In this document: positions 9,640 to 60,959 of the stretch, piece after piece
How positions within the stretch are numbered: position 1 is the first letter of the stretch
Layout of the letters: every line of letters starts with the position of its first letter
NCBI RefSeq assembly: GCF_963921235.1
Contig: NC_086109.1
Coordinates: forward strand, 2,418,001 to 2,482,000
DNA: 64,000 nt
Source: Mobula hypostoma
Lineage: Eukaryota
Direction of reading: 5' to 3'
The notes under the pieces: model-generated
What the model was told of the DNA's origin: nothing
The model's input: only the letters and a program-made list of their open reading frames with translations
Database searches by the model: none
Translations under genes and position numbers: made by a program

Positions 9640-9960
9640 AGTATATAAGGCAATTTGGAATTGTTGAACAAAGGCAGGGGTTCCAGTAGAGGGGAGGACC
9701 ACCCCCTACACACACCCTCTGTGCTTGCGGGGCCAGGAGGGGCTGGCCCTCATTTCCCAGTGATTGGGTTTGGAGAGGTGCTCGCTGTCCCGATGGAGGG
9801 GGTATCTGTGAGCTGGGTTCTATTCCAAGGCATTGCTTGCAGGCTCCTTCGTTTGATCTTCCAAAGGCTGGGTCTCCACTGGCCTGTGGGATCGAGAGCA
9901 GAGTTGAGGGCTTCCAGTCGTGATACTGATACCTGGCCTTCCCTCCACAGAATCTCCCAG
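9640..9960 (+). mobile_element. Degenerate Tx1/L1-clade LINE 3' fragment
   Basis: Peptide GRGSSRGEDH..AVPMEGVSVSWVLFQG resembles the Tx1 ORF2 C-terminus (compare 23493-23729). A similar remnant lies near 12600-12960. Confidence 0.4.
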
Positions 9961-10330: not shown

Positions 10331-10399
10331 CATTGACTGTGTGCGTGATGGGTTTAGCAACAGTTATAAACCCAAATCTGGGTGATAAGAACAGGAAAT

Positions 10400-11720: not shown

Positions 11721-11759
11721 TTCACCCCTTTGCACAGGACATCCTTCCCCAGAGCAGAT

Positions 11760-17049: not shown

Positions 17050-17350
17050 CTCCTGACTGACCATGCTAAGTTGCTGGAACTGAAGGAGGATATATTCAGG
17101 GCCATCCAGGATACTGAGAGCATCATCGATAACAGTTTCTGTACAGTAGTCACAGGTACACTGCAGATGAGTTGGTGAACACCAGGAAAGGTAGAGGGAG
17201 CAGCAACAAGTACTTCCCTTTGGACGCTGCTGCTGGGGGTAGGTGGGGAAATGAACTTTCAGGCCACAGCAGCAGCAGCCAAGCGGGTGGCACTGTGACC
17301 ACTGTGAGGCTCCGTGGGGAAGGGTAAAGTCACACTGAGCAATAGTGACA
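17050..17350 (+). mobile_element. CR1 ORF1 fragment
   Basis: LLTDHAKLLELKEDIFRAIQDTESIIDNSFCTVVT matches the CR1 ORF1 coiled-coil region. Confidence 0.6.
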
Positions 17351-17551
17351 GCTTATTGTCACCTCAGCTCTGTTCCCTCTAAAACTGCACAGGTGCATGG
17401 CTGCGCAACAACTGAAATGCCCTCATGCACATAGCCTTTGTTGCCATGCAGCAGGAATTGGATGCAGCTAGAAAAAGTTTTGAAACATGAAAGATTTACT
17501 TGTTGTACTGTATTTCATTTTACCCTTCAATTAATAAACAAAAATCCAAAG

Positions 17552-17735
17552 TATGGAAAAGAGTAAACAGTCGACGTTATAGGTCATGACCCTTCAAAGG
17601 ACTGCCAAAGGGTTTTGGCCTGAAATGTCAACTGTACTTTTTTCCCCTCGGTGCTGCCTAGCCTGCTGAGTTCCTCCAGCATTTTGTGTGTGTTGCTCGG
17701 ATGTCCAGCATCTGCAGATTTTCTCTTGCTTGTGA
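17552..17735. mobile_element. Fold-back PLE mini-element with back-to-back degenerate hammerhead motifs
   Basis: The minus arm ends at AGTCC.TTGAAGGG..AACGTCGACTG and the plus arm begins CTGCCAAAGGG..GCCTGAAATGTCAACTG, joined at 17600-17603. Confidence 0.65.
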
Positions 17736-18261
17736 TTCTGTTATGCTGGGTGTTGGTGTACTCTTGTATTTGTGTACTTTGCTGAGCTCAGACCGCAGTC
17801 TGGGCCATTAGCAAGCAGTGCTCTGAGAAATAGACAGAACTGGGATCCCTGAACATGACAGACCACACCTTTGACCTGGAGATGCTGTGGGATCTGTTTA
17901 ACTGTGACCCACAGATATAGACCATTTGGCCCTTCCATTACAGTCCCTCCCACCCCATTGGCTATTGCTCTGTTTTCCACTCCATATGTACTCAGTTCCT
18001 CCAGCCTCAGAGTCACGAGGTTCCCCATTGGCAGTTTGATGCTTCACAGCCTCTGGTCCAGTCTCTGGGGATGTGGTGAGTGTGTCCTCAAGCCTCACAC
18101 TGGCTCAATCCCACTACACTGGGACCATGAGCCCAGCTGTGGACACGGGCAGACAGTGGGGCTCAGAAAACAGGGGAACACACAGGATCTGCCCTCACCC
18201 ATTAATTAGGGGTATTTCAGGAACTGGTGAAACCTGGACCCCTTCATGGTATCTCACTTAC

Positions 18262-18570
18262 CAGCTACCTTCAGTTGCACTTTCCTCTTAGTCCGTGTTC
18301 CTGAACTTGTTGTAACAATCACCTCATAAACGTCAGTGTCCTCTTTCTGTAGATCATGGATTGTTAAACTACAGTCTGCTGGATGACAGCCAATCCGTTG
18401 CTTGTACTTTTTAGTATCGAGATATGTCAATTTCCCATTCATGCATTCTGCTATCTTGGTTGAGTCTGATAATATTCTCCACACAACATTGGTAATTTTT
18501 GGTAGTTTTAGGATCTCAGAAGTTAACAAAACCACTTCTCCGAGGGCACCTTCCACGACGGGAATCTCAT
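18262..18570 (-). CDS. Internal exon encoding a CD2/SLAM-type IgV domain (V2, 103 codons)
   Basis: Acceptor TTGTCTCCTCAG|AT and donor G|GTAAGT, phase 1/1, 309 nt, no stops. DEIPVVEGALGEVVLL..VVWR..YKQRI..SLTIHDLQKEDTDVYEV..LKV. Lacks the canonical B-F disulfide, as in CD2/SLAM/CEACAM N-domains. Confidence 0.9.
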
Positions 18571-18678
18571 CTGAGGAGACAAGTGAAAACAGTTATCAGG
18601 AGGAGGAATTAGTGCTGAGGAATCACAGACACAGGAGCAGCCATTTCAAGTTTCAGGATTCAAATCCAAGGTTGTTTA

Positions 18679-21417
18679 TGTCACAATGGTGGGGCATTGG
18701 GAGCAAGGGTGGACCCAAATGCAAGACACATCTTGTGAGGTTAATTAAATTGAGTTTATTGTTTGATACCAGCAGAGCAAAGCAGAAGCAGGAGTAGCAA
18801 ACTGGACAAGGACTCAGGATTACGACTAGGCTGGGACTAGGGGTCTGGGCTTGGACTCGGAATTGGATCCCAGAACTAGCAGCGACATGAAGAGGCTAGG
18901 GTATGGACTCCGAGACAGAGACTGGGCAAGGACCCAGTACCTGGGTCTTGCCTCGGGCTCGGACCCCAGAACCAGGCAAGGACATGACAGGGGCTAGGGA
19001 GAGGAGGAACATGGGAACACAGAGCCTCGGTCTTGGGAGAGCAGGCACATGGAACCATGGACACATACACAGAACACAGAGTCGGGACCCCTCCTTGGGT
19101 ACAGGACATAGGGCCGGGTCTCATGACACCCCCACGGGGCAACGGCAAGACGGCCTGACTTATCCCACGCAGATGAGGACAGGATATGACAAGACATGAC
19201 CCCCTGTGGGGCAACGGCAAGGTGGTCATACTTACCCCATGGAGGCGAGGACAAGACAAGACCAACACGAAAGAACACCAGACAGTACCTATCTTGCTCC
19301 GGCGATAGAACTAGACTGAAGTGCAGGCGAGTGCTGCAGACGAGGGCGAGAGGCGAGAGGGACAGAGAAGGGATTCAGACAGTGGGGTAGGACAGGAATC
19401 ACAGACCGCCAGGGCCAGGACTCGACTCGGAACTTGGATGCCGCCAGGGCCAGGAATCGACTCGGTACTTGGATGCCGCTAGGGACGGGACTTGACTTGG
19501 AGCCTCTGGGTAGTGGCGAGCTCTTGACTCGGCCCGGAAACAGTGGACAGCGGTTCTTGATTCCCTCTGGCGGGTTAACTGACGGACCCACCTCGGTGAG
19601 GAAACTTTGCAGGCTCGGTTTGGCAAGGTAACTTGACAGGGTTGCTCCGGTGAGGAAAGGTGAATTACTGGCACTTGCTTCGGGCGGAGACTAGGCTTGC
19701 TGCGGCCAGGTGACATTGGCACGCCGTACCTTTGGCGACTTTGCAAACGCTCTTGCACCGAACGGCTGAAAGCCGGAGACCATAAACTACCGGTTCAGTC
19801 GAGAGTAAATTGCCTCCAATCACCAAAGCCGAGAGACATGGGAAAACAGGGAACCAAAGGGCAACAGGGAGTCAACGGTCCGGATCGTAACATAAACAAA
19901 GTAAATTTAAAGGGACCCTGATTCAGACCATGACAGTATCCCCCCTCCCTCCCCAATAGGAGCCTCCAGGCAACCAACAGATTTGCCTGTATTATCGATG
20001 ACCTGGGTGGGTGGAGGGGGTTTTGGCCAGCGGGCAAAACAGAACAACAACACCTTGACTTTCAGGCTGACAAGAGTTTGGAAAAACAGTGTTTGTGTCT
20101 GCTGGGTCCATGTTTGGCGAGAGCGTTCTGTCACAATGGTGGGGCATTGGGAGCAAGGGTGGACCCAAATGCAAGGCACATCTTGTGAGGTTAATTAAAT
20201 TGAGTTTATTGTTTGATACCAGGAGAGCAAAGCAGAAGCAGGAGTAGCGAACCGGACAAGGACTCAGGATTATGACTAGGCTGGGACTAGGGCTCTGGGC
20301 TTGGACTCGGAATTGGATCCCAGAACAAGCGGCAACATGCAGAGGCTAGGGTATGGACTCCGAGCCAGAGACTGGGCAAGGACCCAGTATCTGGGTCTTG
20401 CCTCGGGCTCGGACCCCAGAACCAGGCAAGGACATGAGATGGGCTAGGGAGAGGAGGATCATGGAAAAACAGAGCCTCAGTCTCAGGAGAGCAGGTACAT
20501 GGAACCATGGACACATACACAGAATGCAGAGTCAGGACCCCTCCTTGGGTACAGGACATAGGGCCAGGACTCATGAACCCCCATGGGGCAACGCAAGACG
20601 GCCTGACTTACCCCACAGAGGCAAGGACAAGACACAACAAGACATGACCCCCCTCCCCCCCCCACGGGGGAATGGCAAGATGGCCTGACTTACCCCACAG
20701 AGGCGAGGACAAGACATGACCCCCCGTGGAGCAATGGCAACTCGGCCAGACTTACCCCACGGAGGCGAGGACAAGACAAGACCAACACGAAAGAACACCA
20801 GACAGTACCTATTTAGCTCCCGCGATAGAACTAGACTGAAGTGCAGGCGAGGGCTGCAGACGAGGGCTAGAGGTGAGAGGGGCAGAGAGGGGATTCAGAC
20901 AGTGGGGTAGGGTAGGAATCACGGACCGCCAGGGCCGGGACTTGACTCAGAACTTGGATGTACCCAGAGCCAGGACTTGACTTGGAGCCTCTGGGTAGTG
21001 GTGAGCTCTTGACTCGGCCCGGAACAGTGGACAGCGGTTCTTGATTCCCTCCAGCGAGTTAACTGACAGACCCACCTCGGTGAGGAAACTTTGCAGACTC
21101 GCTTTGGCGAGCTAACTTGACAGGGTTGCGCTGGTGAGGAAAGGCGAATTACCAGCACTCGCTTCGGGCGGAGACTAGGTTTGCTCCAGCCAGATGACAT
21201 TGGCACGCTGTACCTTGGTGACTTTGCAAACGCTCCCGGACTGAACGGCTGAAAGCGGAGACTATAAACTACTGGTTCAGTCGAGAGTAAATTGTCTCCA
21301 ATCACCAAAGCCGAGGGACACGGGAAAACAGGGAACCAAAGGGAAACAGGGAGTCAATAGTCCAGATCGTAACATAAACAAAGTAAATTTAAAGGGACCC
21401 CGATCCGGACCATGACA
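18679..21417 (-). mobile_element. Non-autonomous Gypsy (chromovirus/sushi-like) LTR retroelement: two long LTRs and a 193-bp internal region
   Basis: LTRs at 18679-19935 and 20129-21417 with TGTCA..TGACA termini. 5-bp TSD GTTTA (18674-18678, 21418-21422). PPT GGGGAGGGAGGGGGATAC on minus next to 19935. Gag-start remnant ATG GAC CCA GCA GAC (MDPAD) at 20111. Confidence 0.92.
20117..20128 (-). promoter_or_regulatory. Self-priming (Tf1-type) primer-binding site of the LTR element
   Basis: Minus-strand GAACGCTCTCGC directly follows the 5' LTR and lacks the TGG of tRNA PBSs. It is complementary to LTR sequence at 19746-19756 and 21229-21239, which begins 27 nt downstream of a TATA-like motif (21263-21266). 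Confidence 0.7.
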
Positions 21418-22522
21418 GTTTATTGTCACACTTCAGTACACAAGTGTAACGGAGAACAAAATAATTGTTACTGGATCCGAGGTAGCATAAAAAAAACATG
21501 AAGCATAAACAAAACAGTAAATATAGACACGAGACAGGCAGCGGATGCTGGAAATCCAAAGCAAAACACAAAATGCTGGAGGAACTCAGCAGGTCAGGCA
21601 GCATCAATGGAAATGAATAAACGGTAGACATTTTGGGCCGAAATCCTACATAAGAGTAGCTGATGTACATAAACTGATTGCATGTTCATAAAGTGACAAT
21701 AGGTAGTGGAATATCTGTACATTATGTTACTCTGACAGGAAGTTACAACATAATGGTGGTGGGTTTATCGGTGGACGTGTAGATTAGCCTGATGGCTTGA
21801 GGGGAGTCTGCTGGCACATTCTCTGGGTCCCAGCCCAGTGAGAGAGCTGGGCCACAGTGAGCCCACACAGGGAAGAGTGAAGACTTCTTGCACCCGGTCC
21901 TGAGGAAGGAAGTTGCAACTTGCAGCCAGATATCAATAGAGGGGGCAGAGCTGGGGGTGGTGGGGCACAGACACGACAAATTGGACCCCGTCCAGGGATG
22001 CGGTAGGGGTACTGTTTGGGGAAGGTGGGATGAATGGGAGAGTGTAAGTGGTGTGGAGGGACAAAGGGAACTTGCCCACAGATCTTTGAATGAGGAATGA
22101 CAAGAGGGTGAGGCAGTCTGTATCCCTGCATTTGTTGATCAGGATCCCAGATCTGTGAACGGGGATAATGAATGTCTGGGTGGGGATGGTCAGAGCTGAG
22201 GCAGGACAAGAGAGCTCTGTGGATGGAACAGGGCTGGGGAAGGTTAATGGAGGGGTCATGGCAGAATGAGGGAACAGAGGCTGGGGACAGATTTAATAGG
22301 GTGGTGAAACGATGAGGGTCCCTGACTAAACAGAAAGGATCTCTGTCTCTGGGCAGAGAAGACGATACCAAGAGCCGCAGAAAGTACTAGACCGAACGGT
22401 GAGAGGGAAGTGGGGAGTGTACTCCAGGGAAAACATTGTCATGTGTTGGGAGGGGTGGTGGAGGCCATGATGGTCCTCACACAGATCAAACCCTGCATGA
22501 ATAGGACCAGTCACTCTCTCAC

Positions 22523-22619
22523 TGAACGAGAGAGAGAGAGAGAGAGGTGTGAATATGTGAAATGAGCTGGACTGATACAGCATGAAGCTAGCAGGAAGCG
22601 ACAGGCTGAAGAGCCACAT
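22523..22619 (-). CDS. Candidate leader (signal peptide) exon for the V2 unit
   Basis: ATG at 22619, MWLFSLSLPASFMLYQSSSFHIFTPLSLSLSF, phase-1 donor A|GTGAGA. Homologous to 30232-30322, but a 7-nt indel breaks frame conservation between them. Confidence 0.3.
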
Positions 22620-22899
22620 TTGCTGAAATCTTCTGGTCATTCAGTAATTTCAGAGCTGGTTCACAATGGGCCACATGACCTTCCTCAGTTTCATGAGTTC
22701 CCAACATCTGTGGGCCCATCATTATGGGTGCCCACGCCAGGGAGACCTGGGTTTATAGACAGTCAAACCCTCTACAATGTCCCAACACACACCTCTAGGA
22801 CAGGGAAGACTAGGGTTACATTCAGAGTCAAACCCATCTACAATGTCTCAACAGAGACCTCTAGGACAGGGCAGGCTGAAACACTCCACTTTCAGACCC

Positions 22900-23880
22900 T
22901 GCAGGGTTATCTTCACACTGGGCATCCTCCCAGACTGGTGGTGTGGTGCATCTACCAGAGACACTGTCCCTCGGGAAGACTCCCAGCAATAAATATCAGC
23001 TGTCCTGCTCTGTTGTACTGAACTGGGACGGTCACCTTCATTCAGAGTGTTCCTCCACCAGCAGTGAGAGACTTTCTGGCTCCATGGATGGGTGGATGGA
23101 TGAAGCAGTGGATTGGATGAGACTCATAGCTGAAGCCTCTGGCTGTTCTGTCACAACGGGTGTTGAGGGGGCTCATCAATGAGGGTCATTCAGACCAGAT
23201 TGCCACCCATGGCCAGAACTATTCATCAGACCAAGGCTCAGAAGTTGTTCTTGAGATCTGGCCTCTCTGTGACATTTCTCCAGGAGCAGAGGTATTTCTT
23301 TTGCAGGCTGCTCCTGCAAACTCTTCAGTTTTTCACACTGGACATGTTGTGCCAGTCCGTTCTGGTGTCTGGAGTGGAGGTGTTTATGTAGGAGTCCTCC
23401 CCCTTTCCACTGGGGCCTGGAGAAGAGAATGTTGTGAGACAGGTTCCCAAGTCAATTAATGGGCTCCCCAGCCACCTCTCATTTCTGCAGCCTTGAGGAG
23501 AGAGTGTATCATGTATATATGGAGTGTGAGAGGCTGTAGGACTACTGAACCATCTGAAGGCGCTGTACCTCAAGTTCAGCTGCACCTCAGCCCTACCCTT
23601 GTGACCTTTGGTCACCCAATGCGAAGGCAGGTGAGTCACTTGGGAATTCTCCAGATCAATCTGCTCTTGGGCCTGGCCAAGGTGACCATTTTCGGATCCA
23701 AGTGGTGGCCACTTGAGGGTTTTCCCTGAGCCAAATGCCCTTCTTCTGGAGTTGTGTCCATACCCGCGTGTCCCAGGAGAAGGAGCACATGGGCTCTCTA
23801 GAGGGCAATGTGTTAACTTCAATTATGTACATATTGCAATGCGAGTGTGTATGTTAATATGAAAATCATATTTATAAAGA
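22900..23880 (+). mobile_element. Tx1/L1-clade LINE 3' fragment
   Basis: ORF 23493-23729 LHLSPTLVTFGHPMRR..INLLLGLAKVTI matches the Tx1-type ORF2 C-terminus. The upstream part is more degraded and its boundary is approximate. Confidence 0.6.
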
Positions 23881-24017
23881 AATACTCAGCTGAATTTACA
23901 ATTGGAAAGATGTGGGCTGCCGCCAGTCAGTGTGTGGGACAATGGAAAAGAGGGGGAGGTGGGGAGGGCCCAGACTGTCATCAGCCTCAGTGGAGGGAGT
24001 GAGCACACAGAGAGCAG

Positions 24018-24441
24018 TTTATTCTTGCACAAAAGGAAAAGCTTTCCTTCTGTTATATAATGTCAGTCTGGCAGAGCAATGTTGAGGGAGTTTGGAGAGG
24101 ATGACAAATCCGTGGGGTGGGGTTATAAATGCACTGATTTTGTTTAACCCCAGTGAACTTCCTCCACGCCCCCAGGTGAATGGCCCACATCTCCCAGGGC
24201 TGTGTGGGAAGAAAGGTTGATTACAGTCTTGTGTGGACAGCTCCCAGATGACTGGGGTGAAGAAACCTCCCCCAGACCAAGAGCCAGCAAAGGACAGCAA
24301 GAGTCAACCCAGTGAGGAGGAAAATTTGTTGTCTGTCTACCTCAGCCTGGAATTCCTAGTTCCTGAAAAAGAACTATCGAGGTTTCTGACTGAACCAAAT
24401 GCCTGTGCCTCTTCTGAGGAAATGTCCATGCTCAGGTGTCC
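24018..24441 (-). other. Candidate terminal exon of the V1-C2 unit (short tail, in-frame hydrophobic segment after stops, AATAAA)
   Basis: Acceptor GCTTCCTTCCCCAG|GG at 24442/24441. Phase 1 gives GTPEHGHFLRRGTGIWFSQKPR* (stop at 24374). The same frame later reads IFLLTGLTLAVLCWLLVW (24325-24272). AATAAA at 24023-24018. Confidence 0.35.
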
Positions 24442-24684
24442 CTGGGGAAGGAAGCATACCATGTCTCCTTGGATCAGTGGATATTCCGGGACTGGAGTGT
24501 GTCCTGGACAGGGATATCCATGTTTTAAAATGAGAACCATTCTCATGAAAGTCAGTGAACATATGTAAACTTTTTTTTTTGTAAAAGGGCGCAGATTACA
24601 CACAAAATAAAACTCCATCAGCACTATCTTATTGAACAGTCTGGGCAGCCTCTCTAAATTCCAATTGCTCCCTCTGACATTCAC

Positions 24685-24951
24685 CAGATTTGTTCTTTCC
24701 ACAGATGTCTCCCAGCCAGACCTCTGCCATTTCGTTACTGACGGGGTTCCGTGCCTCACACTCATACAGGACTTCTTTATCCCCTTTCGCCTCTCCATGC
24801 CGCTGGAGGTGATAGTGGCTGCCAGTTCCCACAACTTCTCCTCCCCTCCACCACCTGAAGGTGGAGTTGCCTGAATCTTCAGAGCAGATCAAGGTGATAT
24901 TGCAAGTCTTGGCGATGTACTGAACCATGATGACTGTACCTGACACAGGAC
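24685..24951 (-). CDS. Internal exon encoding a CD2/SLAM-type IgC2 domain (89 codons)
   Basis: Acceptor TTTTTCTGTCTCGACCTCAG|GT and donor G|GTGAAT, phase 1/1. PVSGTVI..TCNITLICS..FRWWR..YECEARNPVS..DIC has the four-Cys pattern and NPVS motif typical of CD2/SLAM C2 domains. Sequons NIT, NST, NKS. Confidence 0.9.
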
Positions 24952-25689
24952 CTGAGGTCGAGACAGAAAAAGAAAGGTGAATTAAGAAGATCCTTATCGA
25001 CACCTTAATCCCCAACTCCCGCATTCCATCCCAACAGAAACACATGAAATTTAAACCAGTCCCAACTCATTTCCAACCCAACAGTTTAACTCTTCTCTCA
25101 CCCTTCAGTTCAGCCAGTTACTGCTGCAGGAAGTTCCCACAAGTGCTGCACCCTCTTTCACAAGAGTTACTCATAAAGCTGCGTCATGTCTTGCTGATGT
25201 CTGTGTGTTCCAGGAATTCATTCCAGCTCCATTTCTTTGTTCAGTAGAAACTTTATGTTTGACCATTCAGCCCCTTCCTGTCTGCTGCCCCATTCATGGC
25301 TGATTGCCCTCCACCTCGTTTTCCTGCACCAAACTCACATCCTTTAATTCCCTTGACATCCAAAAACCATCCACATCTACGTTGAATACCCCATGTGACT
25401 GAACTTCTGTAGTGCTGTTTAGTAAAGAGCTGTGAAAATTCACTAGCCTCTGGGTGTGATTTCTCCCGTGTATTACATCCTCTCTTAGTCTGGAGCAGCT
25501 GAGCTCATATTCTATCACTCCAGCCAGGGCTCCATCCTGCAGAACCCGATGAGGTGTTTGGATGTTTCAGTGTGATCACCTCTCATCCCCTCATTTGGCA
25601 GTAGGCACCACCATAGTCGGCCAAATCTCAAATAATGATGAGTCAGAGCCGAGGAGTGAGGTAAAGAGCCTAGTGATGTGTTGCCATGA

Positions 25690-26400
25690 CAGCCATCTTT
25701 CTCAATGTCAGTAAAACAAGAGTTGGTCATTGACTTCAAAATGTTGGGAGTGGGTGGTGTGGAGAGTGAGGGTAGACAATCCTTAACCACAACACTGTCG
25801 AAGCTGAGAAGGCTGCAGTTCGCAGGACTGAACATCACTGATAGACAGTCTTGGTCAAACTCAATAAAGGTTCAAAGCTTCATAAGTATGTGTGTACAAT
25901 ACAACTCTGATATGTCTCTACTTCAGATAGCCACTAAACACAGAAAGAAATGGTGTTGCTGAATGAAAAGCCATTAACTCTTCCCCGACACAAAAAAAGA
26001 GAAGAAACAGAAGTCACAGTCCCCAAAATCCCCCCTTTCCCACAGCAAAAAAAAAGTGACAATAACCACCCCCAACACCCCTCACTCACAGAAAAGACCA
26101 GCCACAATAACAGTCCCCGACCCTCTCACTCGCAAAAATTAACTTCCACAATAACAGTCCCTGGCCCCCTCACTCGCAGAAAAGAACAGCACTTCAACAC
26201 ACTAAAAACCATTGGCATGTCCCCTTTAACCCTCACCAGCTTTTGTAGATGCACCATAGAAAGCATCATGGGTGCATCACACTTGTTATGGCAACTGTTT
26301 TGTATGTGACTGTAAGAAACTGCAGAGAGTTGTGAACACAACTAAGTATATCATGGAAACCAGCCTCCTATCCATGTACACTTGTCCGCAATTCACTTAC
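25690..26400 (+). mobile_element. Rex1/Babar-type LINE fragments with an inserted short tandem repeat (26040-26190)
   Basis: NVSKTRVGH.LQ and LTSFCRCTIESI..KKLQRVVNTTKYIMETSL motifs. Confidence 0.55.
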
Positions 26401-26439
26401 AACATAGAAAAGACACCATCCCAGAGTTCAGAACAGTCA

Positions 26440-27480
26440 TCAAGTCATAGAAAATTACAGCACAGTAACAGATCTTTGGTCCTTCTGCTCCATGCCAAAA
26501 TCATTTAAACTGTCTGCTCCAATCGACCAGCGCCAGGAGCATAGCTCTCCATACAGTACCATCCATGTACCTGTCCAAACTTCTCTTAACTGTTGAAATT
26601 GAGCTTGCACTTCTGGTGACAGCTCATTTCATATTCTCATGACACTCTGTGAAGAATTTTTCCCTCATGTTCCCCCTAAACTTTTCACCTTTCACCCTTA
26701 ACCTATGACCTCTGTTTGTAGTCCTACGCAACTGCAGTGAAAAAACACCTGTTTGCATTTACTCTATTTATACCCTCATAATTTTGTATACCTCAATCAA
26801 GTGTCCCCTCAGTCTTTTACATTCCAAGGAATAATGTCCTAACCTATTCAATCTTTCCTTATAACTCATGTCTTCCAGACCCGGCAACAACCTTGTAAAT
26901 TTTCTCTGCACTCTTTCAACCTTATTTACATCTTTCCTGTAGGCAGCTGACCAACACCGCACATAATATTCCAAAGTAGGTCTCATCAACATTTTATGCA
27001 ACTTCAACTAACATGCCAACTCCTGTACTCAATACTTTGATTTATGAAGGCTATTGTTCCAAAATTCTTCTTTACGACCCTATCTACCTCTGACACCACT
27101 TCCGATGAGTTATAGACCTGTGTTACTATATCCCTTCGTTCTACCACAGTCCTCAGTGGCATACCATTCACAGTGTAAGATCTATCTTGGTTGGTCCTAT
27201 CAAAGTAAAACATGTCACACTTATTGGCATTAAATTCCATGTGCCATTTTTCAGTCCATTTTCAGCTGGTCCAGACCCTGCTGCAAGATCTGATGGTCTT
27301 CCTTGCTGTCTACTATATCCCTAATCTTGATGTCATCTGCAAATTTGCTGACCCAGTTAACCACATTATCGTCCGGGTCGTTGATATAGATGACAAACAA
27401 CAATGGACCAAGCACAAATCCCTGCAGCATTTGCCTTGTCACAGACATCCAGTCAGAGAGGCAGCAATAGCTGAATAATT
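26440..27480 (-). mobile_element. 5'-truncated degenerate CR1
   Basis: QGFVLGPLLFVIYIND..VSKFADD, EFNANKC, RPTLEYYVRCWS..RKDVNKVERVQR. Confidence 0.85.
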
Positions 27481-29412
27481 CAGCCAAAACAATCTATGAC
27501 CTCTGACATCCTCTGGGAGAACAGGGAAAGGCAGAGCTACGGAATATCAGCAGCCGTCTGGATGATGTAGATGGAGCAGCCAGCAGGATCTATGAATGGA
27601 GCTGATCAAGCCATTGAAAACATTGGAGTCTCACTGTCAGTAATTGTATTGTTAAGTGTCGACTCTGTTTCTCCATGATACTAAATAAACTCCCTGTCTT
27701 CATTACAGAGCTTGGGTCCATGCTCTTCAGGTCAGAATTAATTGGGAGTTCTTGGTGAGACTATTTTGGTGTCCTGTGTCTCACTGAAGTTGTTACAGAT
27801 GAAGAGGGCTGAATGCCCTTAGTTGGTAAAGTTACCAAGTGACAGCAATGATCATGGAGACTGGGAGCAGGTGTGAAATAGTCAAGGACAGGACCTGCCT
27901 GGAGTGAATCAACAGTCGGGGGGGCTACAAGGATGCGCCACCTCGTGGGGTAGAGGGTGGAATCTAGAGTGAGGACACAGCATCAGAATAAGTGTCTGCC
28001 CATTTCACACAGAGACGAGGAGTTGGGGGTGTGGGGAACAGGCAGGAAAGTGGACCCAAGGCTGCCAAACCAACCCTGACAGTACTAGGCTTGGGGGCGG
28101 ATTGGTCTACTCCCCCTATTTCTCATTTTCTAATGTTATCCCTCCAATGGGAACCATTTAACCCTGGGATGGAAGAGAGAACATTTCTCAGCCAAACTTC
28201 AGACGGATGTTGCTGGGTGAGATTATTTTCAATGGTTCATTGGTTCAATTTAATATCAGAGAATGTATACAGTATCCAACCTGAAATTCTCACACTTCAC
28301 AGACATCCACGAAACAGAGGAAAACCCCAAAGAATGACTGACAGAAAAATGTTGGAACCACAAAGTCCCCCCACGCCCCTCTCACGCACAAGTGGCAGCA
28401 AAGCATGATCCTTCCCCACTTCCCGTTTCACCCACATTCCAGCAGGAAGCATCAGCCCCACACCACCTTCAGGCAAGCGATAGCAAACCCCCAAAGAGAC
28501 CATGATCGAGGTCCATCAAAAACTATAGTCCACAAACCAGCACTTCAACATGCCACAGGGAGAGAGAGATGTCGTCCCTTCCACAGCGAGAGAGGAGACC
28601 AACAAACAGATCACTGTTTTGATATTGCAGTCTGTAGTCTACTTTGAATGTAATGTTATTGCTAGAGTGAGTCAGGAACCATATTGATGTGTGTGAGTGT
28701 GCTGTTGTGTCCGTGTACCGTGTCACTCACTAGGACACTATATTCAGTGTAATGAGTACACAAGGTATCACTCAGCACAGCACAGCATGAAGGCTGAGGA
28801 ATAAACACTTTGCTGAGCTCAGTCTGGGCAATTAACAAGCAATGCCCTGGGAAACTGATGGGATAACTTGAATCCCTGAACATGACAGACCAGATCTTTA
28901 ACTGGGGATACAGTGACCCACAGACCACTCACCCCCTTTACAGACCCTCCCACCTTATGGGTCCATTGTTCAGCTCAGGTTCCCATGGGTCAAGCAGAGA
29001 AACATCAATGGAAAGAGGCCATTCAGCCCAACTCAACAATCTCTGTGCTGTTCTAAGCTAGTCCCATTTGCCTCCAGACCTTTCATCCATGAACCTGGCC
29101 AAATGCTGTTTAAACACTCACCCTGTAACCACATCTTCCATAGTCCACCCGAGTGCTGATCTCCTCTGGACTCAGAGTAATGAGAGTCATCATTACTTCT
29201 TCTCGGGCTCTGACTCAGTCTCAGGGGATGTGGTAAATGTGTTCCCCAGACTGTCTCAATCCCACTACACTGGGACCATGAGCCCAGCTCTGGACACGGG
29301 CAGTCACTGGGGTTCAGTAAACAGGGAAGCACACAGGATCTGCCCTCACCCATTAATTGGGGGTGTTTCAGGAACCGAAGAAACCCGAGCCCCTCCGCGG
29401 TGTCTCACTCAC

Positions 29413-29733
29413 CGTACACCTCCAGTCGCATTTTGTTCTGAGTCTGTGCTCCTGTACTTGCTGTAACAGACACCTCATAAACATCAGAGTCACTTTTCTG
29501 TAGATCACGGATTTCCAGACCGAAGTTCCTGGGATGAAGAGTTATCCGTCGCTTGTACTCCTCAGATCCGTAATAGTCACTGATCTTGTTTGAATATGAC
29601 ACAATCTTCGCTCTGGGTGAGAACCGTCTCCACACAAGCTGAGCAATGTCTTCTCCGACTGGGATCCCAGGAAGTAAGGAGACCGAGCGTCCCAGAGCTC
29701 CGTTCACAGTGGTAGAGGAATCCCCAGTCCCAG
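29413..29733 (-). CDS. Internal exon encoding a CD2/SLAM-type IgV domain (V1, 107 codons)
   Basis: Acceptor CTCTTGTCTCCTCAG|CT and donor G|GTGAGT, phase 1/1, 321 nt. GTGDSSTTVNGALGRSVSL..LVWR..YKRRITLHPRNFGLEIRDLQKSDSDVYEV..LEVY. No Cys (CD2/SLAM/CEACAM-type V). Confidence 0.9.
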
Positions 29734-30231
29734 CTGAGGAGACAAGAGGAGACAGTCAGCAGATGAGCTCAGTGACTGGAGGATGAATCAGACTGGGAGA
29801 ATCAGAGTTACAAGAGCGGGTGATGGGTCTCATTGTTTGTCTCCCGGCCCTGTGAGAGAAGCAGCCCACCATTCCAACAGTACACGGTAAGCTCAAGAGA
29901 GGAACAGAGTGAAGACTCTTTGCACCCGGTCCAGAGGATGGAAGTTGCAGCCTGCAGCCAGATATCAAAGGCAGGTCAGAGGGGCACAGGTATGAAAAAT
30001 GAGACCCATTCGGGAGAAGGGTTGGGTGAGGTGCTTGGGGAGGTGAACGTGTTGAGGGAACATGTGATAAATGGAAGTTCGTGAGTGCTGTGAGGGACAG
30101 AGGGAGCTCGGAGTGGGGCCTTGCCGGGCACATCCACAGATCCCTGAAGGAGGAGTGAGGGAGAAGATGAGGCCGTTTGTTGCTCCTGGCCGAGGTTTTG
30201 TGAACAGGTTGCGGGGGGAGCTGATAATCAC

Positions 30232-30322
30232 TGCAGTGCGGGTGGAGAGAAAGCAGGAGAATTCGGCAGTATGATGAGTTGAGAAATATTTCCTCTGATA
30301 CAGAAGCAGGAGGCAACCTCAT
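30232..30322 (-). CDS. Candidate leader exon for the V1 unit
   Basis: ATG at 30322, MRLPPASVSEEIFLNSSYCRILLLSLHPHC, phase-1 but weak donor A|GTGATT. Positionally homologous to 22523-22619. Confidence 0.25.
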
Positions 30323-30422
30323 GTAACCACCGTTCAATATCACAGCTCATTGACCTGTTGCTAAACTGGAACTCAGGCTGAGCCGTTTCTCACTCCACTT
30401 ACTGTGTGTACTGGAGACTAAA

Positions 30423-33400
30423 GTCAATCTCTGCCTTCCCCACCGCTGTGCTGGTATCCAGTGTCACCCTCTGCTTCCCCACTGCTGTGCTGGTATCCAG
30501 TGTCACCCTCTGCTTCCCCACTGCTGTGCTGGTATCCAGTGTCACCCTCTGCTTCCCCACTGCTGTGCTGGTATCCAGTGTCACCCTCTGCTTCCCCACT
30601 GCTGTGCTGGTATCCAGTGTCACCCTCTGCTTCCCCACTGCTGTGCTGGTATCCAGTGTCAATCTCTGCTTCCCCACTGCTGTGCTGGTATCCAGTGTCA
30701 ATCTCTGCTTCCCCACCGCTGTGCTGGTATCCAGTGTCACCCTCTGCTTCCCCACTGCTGTGCTGGTATCCAGCGTCACCCTCTGCTTCCCCACTGCTGT
30801 GCTGGTATCCAGTGTCACCCTCTGCTTCCCCACCGCTGTGCTGGTATCCAGTGTCAATCTCTGCTTCCCCACTGCTGTGCTGGTATCCAGTGTCACCCTC
30901 TGCTTCCCCACTGCTGTGCTGGTATCCAGTGTCACCCTCTGCTTCCCCACCGCTGTGCTGGTATCCAGTGTCACCCTCTGCTTCCCCACCGCTGTGCTGG
31001 TATCCAGTGTCACCCTCTGCTTCCCCACTGCTGTGCTGGTATCCAGTGTCAATCTCTGCTTCCCCACTGCTGTGCTGGTATCCAGTGTCAATCTCTGCTT
31101 CCCCACTGCTGTGCTGGTATCCAGTGTCAATCTCTGCTTCCCCACTGCTGTGCTGGTATCCAGCGTCACCCTCTGCTTCCCCACTGCTGTGCTGGTATCC
31201 AGTGTCACCCTCTGCTTCCCCACTGCTGTGCTGGTATCCAGTGTCACCCTCTGCTTCCCCACCGCTGTGCTGGTATCCAGTGTCACCCTCTGCTTCCCCA
31301 CCGCTGTGCTGGTATCCAGCGTCACCCTCTGCTTCCCCACTGCTGTGCTGGTATCCAGTGTCACCCTCTGCTTCCCCACTGCTGTGCTGGTATCCAGTGT
31401 CAATCTCTGCTTCCCCACTGCTGTGCTGGTATCCAGTGTCAATCTCTGCTTCCCCACTGCTGTGCTGGTATCCAGTGTCAATCTCTGCTTCCCCACTGCT
31501 GTGCTGGTATCCAGTGTCAATCTCTGCTTCCCCACCGCTGTGATGGTATCCAGTGTCAATCTCTGCCTTCCCCACCGCTGTGCTGGTATCCAGTGTCAAT
31601 CTCTGCTTCCCCACTGCTGTGCTGGTATCCAGTGTCAATCTCTGCTTCCCCACTGCTGTGCTGGTATCCAGTGTCAATCTCTGCTTCCCCACTGCTGTGC
31701 TGGTATCCAGCGTCACCCTCTGCTTCCCCACTGCTGTGCTGGTATCCAGTGTCACCCTCTGCTTCCCCACTGCTGTGCTGGTATCCAGTGTCACCCTCTG
31801 CTTCCCCACTGCTGTGCTGGTATCCAGTGTCAATCTCTGCTTCCCCACTGCTGTGCTGGTATCCAGTGTCAATCTCTGCCTTCCCCACTGCTGTGCTGGT
31901 ATCCAGTGTCACCCTCTGCTTCCCCACTGCTGTGCTGGTATCCAGCGTCACCCTCTGCTTCCCCACTGCTGTGCTGGTATCCAGTGTCAATCTCTGCCTT
32001 CCCCACTGCTGTGCTGGTATCCAGTGTCAATCTCTGCCTTCCCCACCGCTGTGCTGGTATCCAGTGTCACCCTCTGCTTCCCCACTGCTGTGCTGGTATC
32101 CAGCGTCACCCTCTGCTTCCCCACTGCTGTGCTGGTATCCAGCGTCACCCTCTGCTTCCCCACTGCTGTGCTGGTATCCAGTGTCACCCTCTGCTTCCCC
32201 ACTGCTGTGCTGGTATCCAGTGTCAATCTCTGCTTCCCCACCGCTGTGCTGGTATCCAGTGTCAATCTCTGCCTTCCCCACCGCTGTGCTGGTATCCAGT
32301 GTCAATCTCTGCTTCCCCACCGCTGTGCTGGTATCCAGTGTCACCCTCTGCTTCCCCACCGCTGTGCTGGTATCCAGTGTCAATCTCTGCCTTCCCCACC
32401 GCTGTGCTGGTATCCAGTGTCACCCTCTGCTTCCCCACTGCTGTGCTGGTATCCAGTGTCACCCTCTGCTTCCCCACTGCTGTGCTGGTATCCAGTGTCA
32501 ATCTCTGCTTCCCCACTGCTGTGCTGGTATCCAGCGTCACCCTCTGCTTCCCCACCGCTGTGCTGGTATCCAGCGTCACCCTCTGCTTCCCCACTGCTGT
32601 GCTGGTATCCAGTGTCACCCTCTGCTTCCCCACCGCTGTGCTGGTATCCAGTGTCACCCTCTGCTTCCCCACTGCTGTGCTGGTATCCAGTGTCACCCTC
32701 TGCTTCCCCACCGCTGTGCTGGTATCCAGCGTCACCCTCTGCTTCCCCACTGCTGTGCTGGTATCCAGCGTCACCCTCTGCTTCCCCACTGCTGTGCTGG
32801 TATCCAGTGTCACCCTCTGCTTCCCCACTGCTGTGCTGGTATCCAGTGTCAATCTCTGCCTTCCCCACTGCTGTGCTGGTATCCAGTGTCAATCTCTGCC
32901 TTCCCCACCGCTGTGCTGGTATCCAGTGTCAATCTCTGCCTTCCCCACTGCTGTGCTGGTATCCAGTGTCAATCTCTGCCTTCCCCACCGCTGTGCTGGT
33001 ATCCAGTGTCAATCTCTGCTTCCCCACCGCTGTGCTGGTATCCAGTGTCACCCTCTGCTTCCCCACTGCTGTGCTGGTATCCAGTGTCACCCTCTGCTTC
33101 CCCACTGCTGTGCTGGTATCCAGTGTCAATCTCTGCCTTCCCCACTGCTGTGCTGGTATCCAGTGTCACCCTCTGCTTCCCCACCGCTGTGCTGGTATCC
33201 AGTGTCACCCTCTGCTTCCCCACTGCTGTGCTGGTATCCAGTGTCAATCTCTGCCTTCCCCACTGCTGTGCTGGTATCCAGTGTCAATCTCTGCCTTCCC
33301 CACTGCTGTGCTGGTATCCAGTGTCAATCTCTGCCTTCCCCACCGCTGTGCTGGTATCCAGTGTCACCCTCTGCTTCCCCACTGCTGTGCTGGTATCCAG

Positions 33401-34670
33401 TGTCACCCTCTGCTTCCCCACTGCTGTGCTGGTATCCAGTGTCAATCTCTGCTTCCCCACCGCTGTGCTGGTATCCAGTGTCACCCTCTGCTTCCCCACT
33501 GCTGTGCTGGTATCCAGTGTCACCCTCTGCTTCCCCACTGCTGTGCTGGTATCCAGTGTCAATCTCTGCCTTCCCCACTGCTGTGCTGGTATCCAGTGTC
33601 ACCCTCTGCTTCCCCACCGCTGTGCTGGTATCCAGTGTCACCCTCTGCTTCCCCACTGCTGTGCTGGTATCCAGTGTCAATCTCTGCTTCCCCACTGCTG
33701 TGCTGGTATCCAGTGTCACCCTCTGCTTCCCCACTGCTGTGCTGGTATCCAGCGTCACCCTCTGCTTCCCCACTGCTGTGCTGGTATCCAGCGTCACCCT
33801 CTGCTTCCCCACTGCTGTGCTGGTATCCAGTGTCACCCTCTGCTTCCCCACTGCTGTGCTGGTATCCAGTGTCAATCTCTGCTTCCCCACCGCTGTGCTG
33901 GTATCCAGTGTCACCCTCTGCTTCCCCACTGCTGTGCTGGTATCCAGTGTCACCCTCTGCTTCCCCACTGCTGTGCTGGTATCCAGTGTCAATCTCTGCC
34001 TTCCCCACTGCTGTGCTGGTATCCAGTGTCACCCTCTGCTTCCCCACCGCTGTGCTGGTATCCAGTGTCACCCTCTGCTTCCCCACTGCTGTGCTGGTAT
34101 CCAGTGTCAATCTCTGCTTCCCCACTGCTGTGCTGGTATCCAGTGTCACCCTCTGCTTCCCCACTGCTGTGCTGGTATCCAGCGTCACCCTCTGCTTCCC
34201 CACCGCTGTGCTGGTATCCAGTGTCACCCTCTGCTTCCCCACTGCTGTGCTGGTATCCAGTGTCACCCTCTGCTTCCCCACTGCTGTGCTGGTATCCAGT
34301 GTCACCCTCTGCTTCCCCACTGCTGTGCTGGTATCCAGTGTCAATCTCTGCTTCCCCACTGCTGTGCTGGTATCCAGTGTCAATCTCTGCTTCCCCACCG
34401 CTGTGCTGGTATCCAGTGTCAATCTCTGCTTCCCCACTGCTGTGCTGGTATCCAGTGTCAATCTCTGCTTCCCCACTGCTGTGCTGGTATCCAGTGTCAC
34501 CCTCTGCTTCCCCACTGCTGTGCTGGTATCCAGTGTCACCCTCTGCTTCCCCACTGCTGTGCTGGTATCCAGTGTCAATCTCTGCTTCCCCACTGCTGTG
34601 CTGGTATCCAGTGTCAATCTCTGCTTCCCCACTGCTGTGCTGGAATCCAAGGTCAATCTCTGCCTTTCTC
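30423..34670. repeat. 39/40-bp minisatellite (VNTR), about 108 units by length
   Basis: Unit CACTGCTGTGCTGGTATCCAGTGTCACCCTCTGCTTCCC. Variants CACC/CAAT, ACT/ACC, AGT/AGC, and a 40-bp form (CTGCCTT). No spacers. Confidence 0.98.
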
Positions 34671-58743: not shown

Positions 58744-60959
58744 GAAAAACACAAGTCTTTTTGATTAAACTCACGCTCTGAGATGGACAGTGTCAGCCCG
58801 AGGGAGATGAGAAACCACCCGAAGGCCATATCTCTCCAGCAACTGCCGTGTTCGATAGGACTGGCTTCTGCTTGCAGCCGGTTGTTGGTTGTGACCCGTC
58901 TGAGAACGTGTGTAGGCGTTGTGAGCACATTCAGGAAGCCACAACTTCACGTCAGCATGGAGGCTGTGACAGTGGGTGCATGTCAGTGACTGATCACTTC
59001 CGCAAGACATGGAGATTTACAGCGATTATGTTTGATATCATTAATAGTAACCCCTCATTTCAAATAGATGACAGAAAGCCACGGAGCGACATGCCAGATA
59101 ATATGGCAAAGATATTTTTAATGACGTCCTATGAAGGAAGCTTGAAGGCAATTGGGCAAAGTCAAAAGGAAATCGGGTTTGACCAACTTACTGAAGTTCT
59201 TGAAAGAAGTGACATGCGTTTTGGATAAAGGGGAATGGGAAAGACTATAACTTTGATTTCTGGAAGCCAAGTGATAAAGTGCTGAAATGAAAGTGTTTGC
59301 AGAAACTATAGGCCTGTGGTATTGGAAACAACGAGTTGGTGTGAGTAGAAGATAGGCTGGATAATAGGGAACAATATGGCCATAAAGTTCAAAGTCCAAA
59401 GATGAGTTTATTGTCATGTGTGCAAGTACATGTTTGCAAATTAAAACTTACTTTCAGCGTAATCTCAGACACGAAGCACCCTATAAGCAGCATTTACAAA
59501 ACAAAGCATAATTATCCATAAACATGAGAAAATCTGCAGATGCTGGAAATCCAAAGCAACGCACACAAAATGCAGCAGGAACTGGCAGGTCAGGCAGCAG
59601 CCATGGGAAAGAGTAAACAGTCGTGTTTTTGGGCAAAGACCGAATGGAGAGTCTCAGACTGAAATGTCAAATGTTGTGGAGATTAAGGTGTTTTCCAACT
59701 GCTTCAAGAACCAAATGTTTGAGGAAAAGTAGCTGTTCTTGTTCACCTATATACTTACTGTAATACTGTTTTTTTTCTCTATATTTATTTATCATGTATT
59801 TCATTGTATTGCTGGCATAAAGTTAACAAATTTCATGACATATCCGGTGATATTAAACCTGATTCTGATTGAACTTGACCATGTAGGACTCTAAAGTTCT
59901 GTACCAACTGCCCAAAGATAGCTGCAAAAAGCTGGCTTGGCTGAGATATTGGGGATCTTTGATGACGGACGCTGCCTTCTTGAGGCAATCTTGCCTTCTT
60001 GGCAGGGAGGGATGTGCCTTTGCTGTGTTAGACAGATCCCATTACTTTATGCACCTTCTTACAAGACAATTATGTAATCAGGATACTTTCAACTGTAATT
60101 GCTTGTCAGAGTGTTCAGTGACAAGCCAAACTTTATGTAGGTGGCACACTTTCCTTCTACAGTGTTTGCATCCATGCACGGGGCCCGAAACAGATCATCC
60201 AGCATATTTATGCACAGGAATTAATAAAACTGCTGATTCTCTCCAACGCCATTCATCAATGTAGACTGATGAATGTTCATCCTCCTTCTCTTCCTGAGTC
60301 AGGTCTGCAGATTTGCTGGTGAGCCATAAGACATACAGGAGCGGAGTTATACCATTCAGCCAATCGAGTCTGCTATGCCATTCAGTCATGGCTGATTCAC
60401 CTTTCCTCTCACTGCCTTTCTTCTGCCTTCTCCCCGTTACCTTTGGAGTCCTGACTAATCAAGAACCTATGAACCTCCATTTTAAATACACAGTGACATT
60501 GCCTCTGCAGATCATTGTGGCAATGAGTTCTGCAGATTCACACCCTAAGGCAAAATAAATCCTCCCTCATCTCTGTTACACAGGGATGTTCTTGTATTCT
60601 AAGTTAGTACCCCACTGGTCCTGTACTACCCCACTACTGGAAACATCCTTTCCATGTCCGATCTATATTCAATATTTTCATTATTCAATAATTTTCAATG
60701 AGATGCCCCAATATTCTTCTTCAACTCCACTGAGTATAAGCCCAAGCTATTAAAAGCTCCTCATACATTAACCCTTTCATTTTCAGCATCATTCTCATGA
60801 AAGTCTTGCTGGACCGTCTCTAATGCCAAAACATCTGTCCTGAGATAAGGAACATAAACTGCTCACAATACTCTGTGCATTCTGACCAACGATGATAAAG
60901 CCTTGGCATTATATCCTTGTTTTCATATTCTAGTCCTCTGAAAAAGGTTGCAAACATTG

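What the first reader, a model, noticed from the sequence alone, without database searches (positions are those of the whole stretch)
18262..30322. CD2/SLAM-like locus: two tandem paralogues or one Ly9-like V-C2-V gene
Seen: three phase-1/1 exons in the order V1 (29413-29733), C2 (24685-24951), V2 (18262-18570), which can splice in frame. The sequence upstream of V2 (21850-22150, 22520-22620) is homologous to that upstream of V1 (29880-30200, 30230-30325). An AATAAA lies at 24018. I found no second C2, TM or ITSM exon between 1 and 18260. Known: CD2/SLAM genes have V-C2 ectodomains, and Ly9/SLAMF3 has V-C2-V-C2. Inference: most likely two head-to-tail paralogues, the second either truncated or completed beyond the window. 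A V-C2-V read-through isoform is also possible.
Basis: partly seen in the sequence, partly recalled or inferred. Interest (0 to 1): 0.7.

Follow-up and report, generated by a model that had tools for sequence, protein, structure and literature searches.

The report
Devil-ray SLAM-like V-C2-V gene, anchorless
The three exons are real but belong to one already annotated devil-ray immune-receptor gene (SLAM/CD2 family) that carries three Ig domains in a row and, unlike its near-identical neighbour, has lost its membrane anchor, so it is probably secreted.

Summary
All three phase-1 Ig exons (V1, C2, V2) are confirmed on the minus strand. They are not two tandem genes. Joined to a leader exon 29 kb upstream (58829-58775) and a last exon 8.4 kb downstream (9883-9750), they translate exactly to the public RefSeq model XP_062921216.1 (LOC134355366, Mobula hypostoma, 361 aa).

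RNA contigs from four runs cover V2 at exactly its exon borders. One contig carries the last 29 bases of C2 fused to V2.

The same V-C2-V order occurs in the neighbouring near-identical paralogue, the Mobula birostris orthologue, and sawfish and stingray models. Those of the paralogue, M. birostris and the sawfish have a transmembrane (TM) segment.

This copy has no TM exon. V2 (phase 1) is spliced onto the old last cytoplasmic exon (phase 2) in a shifted frame, which gives a 44-residue hydrophilic tail. The product is therefore predicted to be secreted; that and any decoy role are inferred.

V domains match CD48, CD2 and SLAMF5/6 best. The scan has already found other SLAM-like genes with serial V domains elsewhere in this genome.

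This is an ordinary gene-structure resolution with a modestly interesting anchor-loss twist.

The parts
58775..58829 (-). Leader (signal-peptide) coding part of exon 1: MAFGWFLISLGLTLSISE plus the first base of the next codon; donor gtgagt; ends in phase 1
   Evidence: tblastn of P0002 residues 1-18 is 100% identical; sequence read; the five-exon join translates exactly to P0002
29413..29733 (-). V1 exon: cysteine-free V-set Ig domain, phase 1/1
   Evidence: PF07686, E 5e-8; CD48 8e-7, CD2 4e-6, SLAMF6
24685..24951 (-). C2 exon: four-cysteine C2-type Ig domain, phase 1/1
   Evidence: (C22, C64 and C83 invariant, C16 in at least 90% of rows, across 18 relatives)
18262..18570 (-). V2 exon: second, strongly diverged V-set domain, phase 1/1, spliced directly to C2 in RNA
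   Evidence: In one search contigs cover exactly 18261-18571 with 0 mismatches. The loose end equals window 24686-24714
9750..9883 (-). Terminal coding exon (stop TGA at 9752-9750). It is read as GQWRPSLWKIKRR...ITGK in the gene model. In the +1 frame it reads PVETQPLEDQTKEPASNALE*, homologous to the C-terminal cytoplasmic exon of the TM-bearing relatives
   Evidence: (tblastn of the M. birostris tail, 74% over 19 aa, E 5e-5, ending at the stop)
28807..30108 (-). V1 copy of the duplicated segment (V exon plus flanking intron)
   Evidence: blastn blocks; graded identity (downstream intron 83-86%, exon 3' third 76%, exon middle 50%)
17776..22072 (-). V2 copy of the duplicated segment, split by later insertions
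18676..21419 (.). LTR-type insertion (direct repeats 18676-19937 and 20126-21419) inside the C2-V2 intron. It accounts for most of the extra distance between V2 and its upstream homology block
23036..24684 (-). Retained-intron stretch of a minor RNA form: C2 donor unused, cryptic donor after 23036 (GAAG|gtgacc) joined to the V2 acceptor. It runs through the AATAAA at 24023
   Evidence: X13 record 24 (1708 nt, depth 8.9 against 156 for the V2 exon contig) and the joint 18570/23036 with CT..AC ends
30429..34663 (.). 39-bp minisatellite, 108 copies, in intron 1 just upstream of V1

Best explanation
The three exons are the ectodomain of one five-exon gene of about 49 kb on the minus strand. It is RefSeq LOC134355366 of the devil ray Mobula hypostoma, a SLAM/CD2-family member with a leader-V1-C2-V2 layout.

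The V-C2-V order is the normal product, not a read-through. C2 is spliced straight to V2. The same order is found in the adjacent near-identical paralogue and in other rays, where the paralogue, M. birostris and sawfish models end in a transmembrane helix and a short tyrosine-free tail.

This copy has lost the TM exon. V2 ends in phase 1 and is joined to the old last cytoplasmic exon, which was built for phase 2. That exon is therefore read one base out of frame and adds a 44-residue hydrophilic, unconserved, disordered tail before a stop in the last exon.

The predicted product is a secreted three-Ig protein whose distal V1 differs by one residue from that of the membrane-bound twin. By analogy with CD2/SLAM receptors, which bind in trans through the N-terminal V domain, it would occupy the same partner as the twin and act as a soluble competitor or ligand.

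Shown here: the exons, the splice C2 to V2, the exact match to the public model, the absence of a TM exon, and the frame shift in the last exon. Inferred: secretion, binding and the decoy role.
For: - Exons and splice sites.
- The five-exon join translates exactly to P0002 = XP_062921216.1.
- RNA: V2 is covered exactly at 18261-18571 with 0 mismatches by contigs at depth 12-156 in runs X4, X11, X12 and X13, while unique intron bins sit at 0-9.
- An X13 loose end behind 18571 is identical to window 24686-24714, the last bases of C2, and is unique in the window.
- X4 record 25 and X12 record 9 carry 296 unplaced nt on the C2 side. That equals 267 nt of C2 plus 30 nt of V1 (k-1) once the shared junction base is counted. 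They also carry 28 and 86 nt on the 3' side.
- The one-base overhang at 18261 fits a next exon that starts with G, as 9883 does.
- Relatives with V-C2-V: P0135 (neighbour LOC134355367, 303/317 identical, with TM and tail), P0144 (M. birostris), P0007/P0136 (Pristis) and P0138/P0139 (Hypanus).
- TM loss: the P0135 tail has no tblastn match in the window. Smith-Waterman search of three TM/cytoplasmic queries against 9884-18261 scores at or below shuffled nulls. There is no hydrophobic ORF in that intron.
- Frame shift.
- Family: PDB profile hits are CD48 7e-15, SLAMF5 8e-12, CD2 and SLAMF6. V1-C2 of the model superposes on NTB-A, CD2 and CD48 at TM 0.77. ITSMs occur in many relatives.
- The tail is modelled as disordered, pLDDT about 30.
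Against: - The letters of the leader-to-V1 and V2-to-last-exon junctions were not seen.
- The runs are only guessed to be RNA, and they are contigs, not reads.
- Genomic DNA of the paralogue and of the M. birostris gene could not be fetched, so the TM-exon deletion has no mapped breakpoints.
- The new tail has no homologue, which also fits a decaying duplicate.
- Secretion and binding are untested.
- The two 'paralogues' might be two haplotypes kept side by side in the assembly.
Confidence: 0.85

Rival explanations
1. Two head-to-tail paralogous genes. Gene 1 would be leader-V1-C2 ending at the AATAAA near 24018. Gene 2 would have its own leader near 22520-22620, then V2, and be truncated or continue leftwards.
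For: V1 and V2 lie in a duplicated segment with homologous flanking intron. An AATAAA lies at 24023. A TM-like ORF (DRQQIFLLTGLTLAVLCWLLVWG...) lies at 24336-24223.
Against: - An RNA contig fuses C2 to V2.
- No joint leaves 22520-22620, and coverage there is only 2.6-3.7.
- The proposed leader homology is at chance.
- The duplicated segment contains no leader, and the true leader is at 58.8 kb.
- A contig reads through the AATAAA.
- The TM-like ORF has only a purine-rich acceptor, while the good acceptor at 24363 gives GTRNSRLR*. It has no family homologue.
- V-C2-V is conserved in five other gene models.
Confidence: 0.03
2. Same single-gene structure, but the copy is a transcribed dead-end duplicate. 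Loss of the TM exon made it functionless, and the shifted tail is noise on the way to pseudogenisation.
For: The TM exon is absent. The 44-residue tail is unconserved and disordered. The twin, which is a recent copy, keeps the full architecture.
Against: - The 361-codon frame is intact with clean splice sites.
- Expression is far above intron level in four runs.
- The stop lies in the last exon, so no nonsense-mediated decay is expected.
- At the 12 V2 sites where the twins differ, this copy keeps the M. birostris residue at 7 and the twin at 3, so this copy is not the one drifting (read by eye).
- TM-less V-C2-V models also exist in Hypanus and Hemitrygon.
Confidence: 0.3
3. The anchorless and anchored 'paralogues' are two haplotypes of one polymorphic locus retained in tandem by the assembler. 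The TM-less form would then be a structural allele rather than a separate gene.
For: The two models are 96% identical over 317 residues, have adjacent LOC numbers on one 98-Mb scaffold and are of similar size, 49 against 52 kb. Immune gene clusters are prone to such artefacts (general knowledge).
Against: Differences are sharply clustered: 12 of 14 lie in V2 (Fisher p 4e-5). That is more typical of paralogue divergence or conversion tracts than of uniform allelic difference. Nothing here tests read depth.
Confidence: 0.1

Closest known systems
Ly9 / SLAMF3 (CD229)
   Same: A SLAM-family member with more than two Ig domains and a second V domain after the first C2. Relatives of this gene in Hemitrygon and Heptranchias (P0004, P0009) are V-C2-V-C2-TM and are named Ly-9-like by NCBI.
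   Different: This gene has no second C2, no TM and no ITSM tail. Its V2 is a long-branch domain only 43% identical to V1.
SLAMF8 / SLAMF9 and CD48 (SLAMF2)
   Same: These are CD2/SLAM ectodomains without tyrosine switch motifs. The M. birostris orthologue is named SLAM family member 8-like. CD48 is the best PDB sequence match of V1 and V2.
   Different: Those proteins are V-C2 only and are membrane-attached by a TM helix or GPI anchor. This product has three Ig domains and no hydrophobic C-terminus.
Soluble SLAM (secreted SLAMF1 isoform lacking the TM exon; from my own knowledge, not checked here)
   Same: A SLAM-family ectodomain released because the TM-coding exon is left out of the mRNA.
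   Different: In mammals this is an alternative splice of a gene that still has the exon. Here the exon is gone from the DNA of this copy, and a separate twin gene supplies the membrane form.
LOC134355367 (XP_062921217.1, the neighbouring M. hypostoma gene) and M. birostris XP 'SLAM family member 8-like' (P0144)
   Same: Both have leader-V1-C2-V2 with 96% and about 79% identity. The last exon is homologous.
   Different: Both keep a TM helix and a cytoplasmic tail of about 40 residues. The twin has gained two N-glycosylation sequons in V2 (NIT, NST). M. birostris uses a different leader peptide.

Membership tests
CD2/SLAM family (Ig superfamily) | N-terminal V-set domain that lacks the canonical B-F intradomain disulfide | tested here: met
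   V1 has no cysteine. V2 has none at the B or F strand positions (YEV instead of YxC). Pfam V-set E 5e-8 and 2e-7.
CD2/SLAM family (Ig superfamily) | V domain closest in sequence to CD2, CD48, CD58 or SLAMF members rather than other IgSF groups | tested here: met
   Single sequences: CD48, CD2, SLAMF6, SLAMF5 and CD58 lead. Profile of 28 V domains: CD48 7e-15, SLAMF5 8e-12, CD2 2e-9, SLAMF6 2e-8, 2B4 6e-6; the CEA N-domain reaches only 5.5e-6.
CD2/SLAM family (Ig superfamily) | Membrane-proximal C2 domain with two disulfides (four conserved cysteines) | tested here: met
   The four cysteines C16, C22, C64 and C83 are present. C22, C64 and C83 are invariant and C16 is in at least 90% of 18 relatives. 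By sequence the C2 profile is generic: titin, CEACAM and NCAM rank ahead of SLAMF6 at 9e-4.
CD2/SLAM family (Ig superfamily) | V-C2 two-domain fold superposable on solved CD2/SLAM ectodomains | tested here: met
   AlphaFold model with mean pLDDT 74, Ig domains mostly 80-95. Foldseek: NTB-A 2if7 TMt 0.77 rmsd 3.3; CD2 1hng 0.77; CD48/CD2 chimera 2dru 0.77.
CD2/SLAM family (Ig superfamily) | One exon per Ig domain, all in phase 1, after a separate leader exon | tested here: met
SLAM subfamily (signalling members) | TM helix plus cytoplasmic ITSM TxYxx[V/I] | tested here: not met
   No TM and no ITSM in this gene. The twin and the M. birostris orthologue have a TM but tyrosine-poor tails without an ITSM. 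ITSMs are present in many more distant relatives.
Ly9/SLAMF3 type | Four Ig domains, V-C2-V-C2 | tested here: not met
   The window holds only one C2 exon (tblastn). The gene model and twin are V-C2-V.
CD2/SLAM family (Ig superfamily) | Location in a genomic cluster of family members | not tested
   Earlier notes of this scan place other SLAM-like genes from 1.08 Mb before to 0.32 Mb beyond the window. I did not check them.

The most novel reading that the evidence does not exclude
Rays have turned a young duplicate of a membrane SLAM-like receptor into a dedicated secreted decoy. The TM exon was deleted and the old cytoplasmic exon is reused out of frame. This would give a gene-encoded soluble/membrane receptor pair with near-identical binding domains, within a batoid-specific radiation in which SLAM Ig domains are shuffled (V-C2-V, V-V-V, V-V-C2-V).
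Probability: 0.3. Interest if true: 0.5.

Novelty: new variant of a known kind. Interest (0 to 1): 0.35.

Why it matters
This settles the gene structure. The locus is one annotated gene, not two, and its leader lies 29 kb away.

It also shows that in rays the SLAM/CD2 family is built with domain orders that mammals lack. Mammals have V-C2 and V-C2-V-C2.

If the anchorless copy is really secreted, it gives a simple natural pair, a membrane receptor and a soluble twin. That pair could be used to study how cartilaginous fishes tune SLAM-type cell-cell recognition, and how frame-shifted reuse of an exon can follow exon loss without killing a gene.

The gene model itself is already public, so the gain is interpretation, not discovery.

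Tried and rejected
- The search for homologous proteins with the C2 peptide alone found no candidate. Given the tool's length window, this blank says nothing.
- An ITSM pattern scan of all six frames found nothing credible.
- A strict AG...GT phase-1 exon scan between C2 and V2 found nothing. Below V2 it found only implausible ORFs.
- The TM-like ORF at 24336-24223 with the AATAAA at 24023 was considered as a terminal exon of a 'gene 1'. I rejected it for four reasons: the acceptor is weak, the strong acceptor at 24363 runs into a stop after 8 codons, it has no family homologue, and RNA contigs there are at intron level and read through the signal.
- The genomic DNA of the paralogue and of the M. 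birostris gene could not be fetched because the files are too large.
- Rfam on 17-31 kb gave no match.
- Two literature searches found nothing on SLAM-family architecture in cartilaginous fishes.
- The V1/V2 split into N- and C-terminal parts at protein level did not identify a conversion donor.
The two splice sites are 6,116 bases apart and the stretch limit is 6,000, so the junction was read from a loose end instead.
- No complex prediction was attempted.
Full report
**Observation**

Each is bounded by a pyrimidine-rich ...cag acceptor and a gtgagt, gtgaat or gtaagt donor.
- V1 is 106 aa with no cysteine.
- V2 is 102 aa.
- V1 and V2 are 43% identical, with tblastn E about 3e-20 inside the window.
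- C2 is 88 aa and has four cysteines.
- Pfam calls both V peptides V-set, above the gathering score. C2 is a weak Ig_2/Ig_3 match.
- An AATAAA lies at 24023-24018.
- No second C2 exists anywhere in the window.

**The flanking homology**

The V exons sit in a duplicated segment that also carries intron sequence:
- 29199-29559 ~ 18042-18408, 79%
- 28807-28915 ~ 17776-17889, 76%
- 29906-29968 ~ 21874-21936, 90%
- 30038-30108 ~ 22002-22072, 74%

**What the gene is**

An exhaustive HMMER search with V1 returned a 361-aa protein, P0002. Its sequence is leader + V1 + C2 + V2 + a 44-residue tail.
- It is XP_062921216.1, 'uncharacterized protein LOC134355366' of Mobula hypostoma.
- tblastn places its leader at 58829-58776 and its tail at 9896-9753.
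- Joining 58829-58775, V1, C2, V2 and 9883-9751 translates to P0002 exactly.

So the gene spans about 49 kb. Its first intron is 29 kb long and holds a 4.2-kb, 39-bp minisatellite.

**RNA**

Four runs of one 2024 study hold every sampled word of V2. Three others hold 0.43 of a 501-base stretch around V1.

I laid runs X4, X11, X12 and X13 on 18230-24229. The results were:
- Contigs cover 18261-18571 exactly, with no mismatch, at depth 12-156. Unique intron bins (21630-24229) sit at 0-9. This is the pattern of spliced RNA.
- A loose end behind 18571 reads AGATTTGTTCTTTCCACAGATGTCTCCCA. That is window 24686-24714, the last bases of C2, and it is unique in the window. This is the C2-to-V2 junction.
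- Two longer contigs (X4 record 25 and X12 record 9) carry 296 unplaced bases on that side. With the shared junction base, that is 267 of C2 plus 30 of V1 (k-1). They also carry 28 and 86 bases on the other side. One path therefore runs V1-C2-V2-next exon. I did not see those letters.
- The one-base overhang at 18261 fits a next exon that begins with G, as 9883 does. The twin's TM exon must instead begin with A.
- A minor form (X13 record 24, depth 8.9) leaves the C2 donor unused and runs through the intron and through the AATAAA. It then uses a cryptic donor after 23036 to reach the V2 acceptor. Its frame stops 19 codons past C2.
- Nothing joins 22520-22620 to V2.

**Relatives**
- The same 90% cluster holds P0135 (XP_062921217.1, the neighbouring LOC134355367). 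It is identical at 303 of the first 317 residues and continues with a TM helix and a 39-residue tail.
- M. birostris has P0144, also V-C2-V-TM-tail.
- Pristis pectinata P0007/P0136 are V-C2-V-TM.
- Hypanus sabinus P0138/P0139 are V-C2-V with short hydrophilic ends.
- Hemitrygon akajei has V-V-C2-V, V-V-V-TM and V-C2-V-C2-TM models.
- The shark Heptranchias has V-C2-V-C2-TM.

V-C2-V is therefore a recurrent architecture in rays, not an annotation accident of this locus. Some of these automatic models may still be imperfect.

**Loss of the anchor**

The twin's TM/cytoplasmic tail has no match in the window. Three further checks agree:
- Smith-Waterman searches of three TM-tail queries against all minus-strand frames of 9884-18261 score 27-35, against shuffled-query maxima averaging 33-34.
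- No hydrophobic ORF lies in that intron.
- The M. birostris C-terminus does match 9879-9823 at 74% over 19 residues (E 5e-5) and ends at a stop.

That match is in the +1 frame of the annotated last exon, PVETQPLEDQTKEPASNALE*. The gene model reads the +2 frame, QWRPSLWKIKRR....

The old last exon was entered in phase 2. V2 ends in phase 1. With the TM exon gone, the splice shifts the frame and creates a tail that:
- has no homologue;
- has no hydrophobic stretch;
- is modelled as disordered.

The stop is in the last exon, so the mRNA should be stable.

**Family**
- A profile of 28 V domains hits CD48 (7e-15), SLAMF5 (8e-12), CD2, SLAMF6, CD58 and 2B4 ahead of CEACAM N-domains.
- The C2 profile is generic.
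- The AlphaFold model has three beta-sandwich domains.
- Its V1-C2 unit superposes on NTB-A, CD2 and CD48 at TM 0.77.
- Many more distant relatives carry one or two TxYxx[V/I] motifs. This gene, its twin and the M. birostris orthologue carry none.

**History of V1 and V2**

DNA identity between the two copies is uneven:

| Segment | Identity |
|---|---|
| Downstream intron | 83-86% |
| 3' third of the exon | 76% |
| Middle of the exon | 50% |
| 5' third of the exon | 59% |

- Nei-Gojobori dS is 0.72 for the first two thirds of the exon and 0.24 for the last third. Intron K is 0.17.
- dN/dS is about 1 in the first two thirds and about 1.3 in the last third.
- In a V-domain tree, Mobula V2 sits on a very long branch outside the well-supported clade that holds Mobula V1 and Hemitrygon V1.

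I read this as an old V pair whose 3' part and flanks were later homogenised by gene conversion. Very fast evolution of the V2 body after a younger duplication is not excluded, because dS estimates are unreliable at this level of amino-acid divergence.

Between the twins, 12 of 14 differences fall in V2 (Fisher p 4e-5). At those sites this copy more often keeps the M. birostris residue (my reading).

**Verdict**

This is one annotated SLAM/CD2-family gene with a V-C2-V ectodomain. The two-gene reading is rejected.

The point worth keeping is that this copy is anchorless through TM-exon loss and frame-shifted reuse of the last exon, beside a membrane-bound twin. Secretion and a decoy or soluble-ligand role are inferences.

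The scan has already met SLAM-like genes with serial V domains elsewhere in this genome (s1-142039).

**Limits**
- The runs are only guessed to be RNA, and they are contigs rather than reads.
- The junction letters for leader-to-V1 and for V2-to-last exon were not seen.
- A retained haplotype is not excluded.

Noticed in passing
window 30429-34663: A 39-bp minisatellite of 108 copies, 96% matching, GC-rich with strong C/T skew. It lies in intron 1, 700 bp upstream of V1.
   Followed up: partly
window 21523-21650 (copies at 59518-59634, 13864-13989, 17609-17735, 51494-51576, 1180-1277): A short interspersed repeat containing ...AAATGCTGGAGGAACTCAGCAGGTCAGGCAGCATC.... Its summed contig depth in the RNA runs is 36,000-196,000, against 10-150 for the V2 exon, and it has hundreds of different loose ends. 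It is an extremely abundant transcribed repeat. No Rfam family matched.
   Followed up: partly
window 18676-21419: LTR-type element in the C2-V2 intron. RNA contigs show joints such as 18989/20342 and 19262/20677 that look like other copies or solo-LTR forms of the same family, expressed elsewhere.
   Followed up: no
window 58775-58829 versus P0144: Both M. hypostoma copies use the leader MAFGWFLISL(G/W)LTLSISE. It resembles the leaders of other family genes (P0011-P0013...LTLSVS/LTLSIS...). The M. birostris orthologue and Hemitrygon relatives use MW(M/V)VS.LLCV..WVA. No such leader was found in the window. The first exon seems to have been swapped in the M. hypostoma lineage.
   Followed up: partly
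P0002 versus P0135, residues 228-239 of V2 (window about 18490-18530): Eight of twelve consecutive residues differ between the twins (EVVLLTSEILKLPKIT against EVAWLTFEIPEAANIT). The membrane twin gains two N-glycosylation sequons (NIT, NST). C2 is identical and V1 differs at one site.
   Followed up: partly
window 26449-27463 and 15166-16163 (inverted), also 57600-57990 and 35537-35851: Copies of one interspersed repeat, 72-77% identical, in opposite orientation in the V1-C2 intron and in the V2-last-exon intron.
   Followed up: no
window 24223-24336, minus strand: An ORF with a TM-like stretch (IFLLTGLTLAVLCWLLVWG) lies 350 bp after C2 and 200 bp before an AATAAA. It has no family homology and no RNA support, so it is probably chance.
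   Followed up: yes
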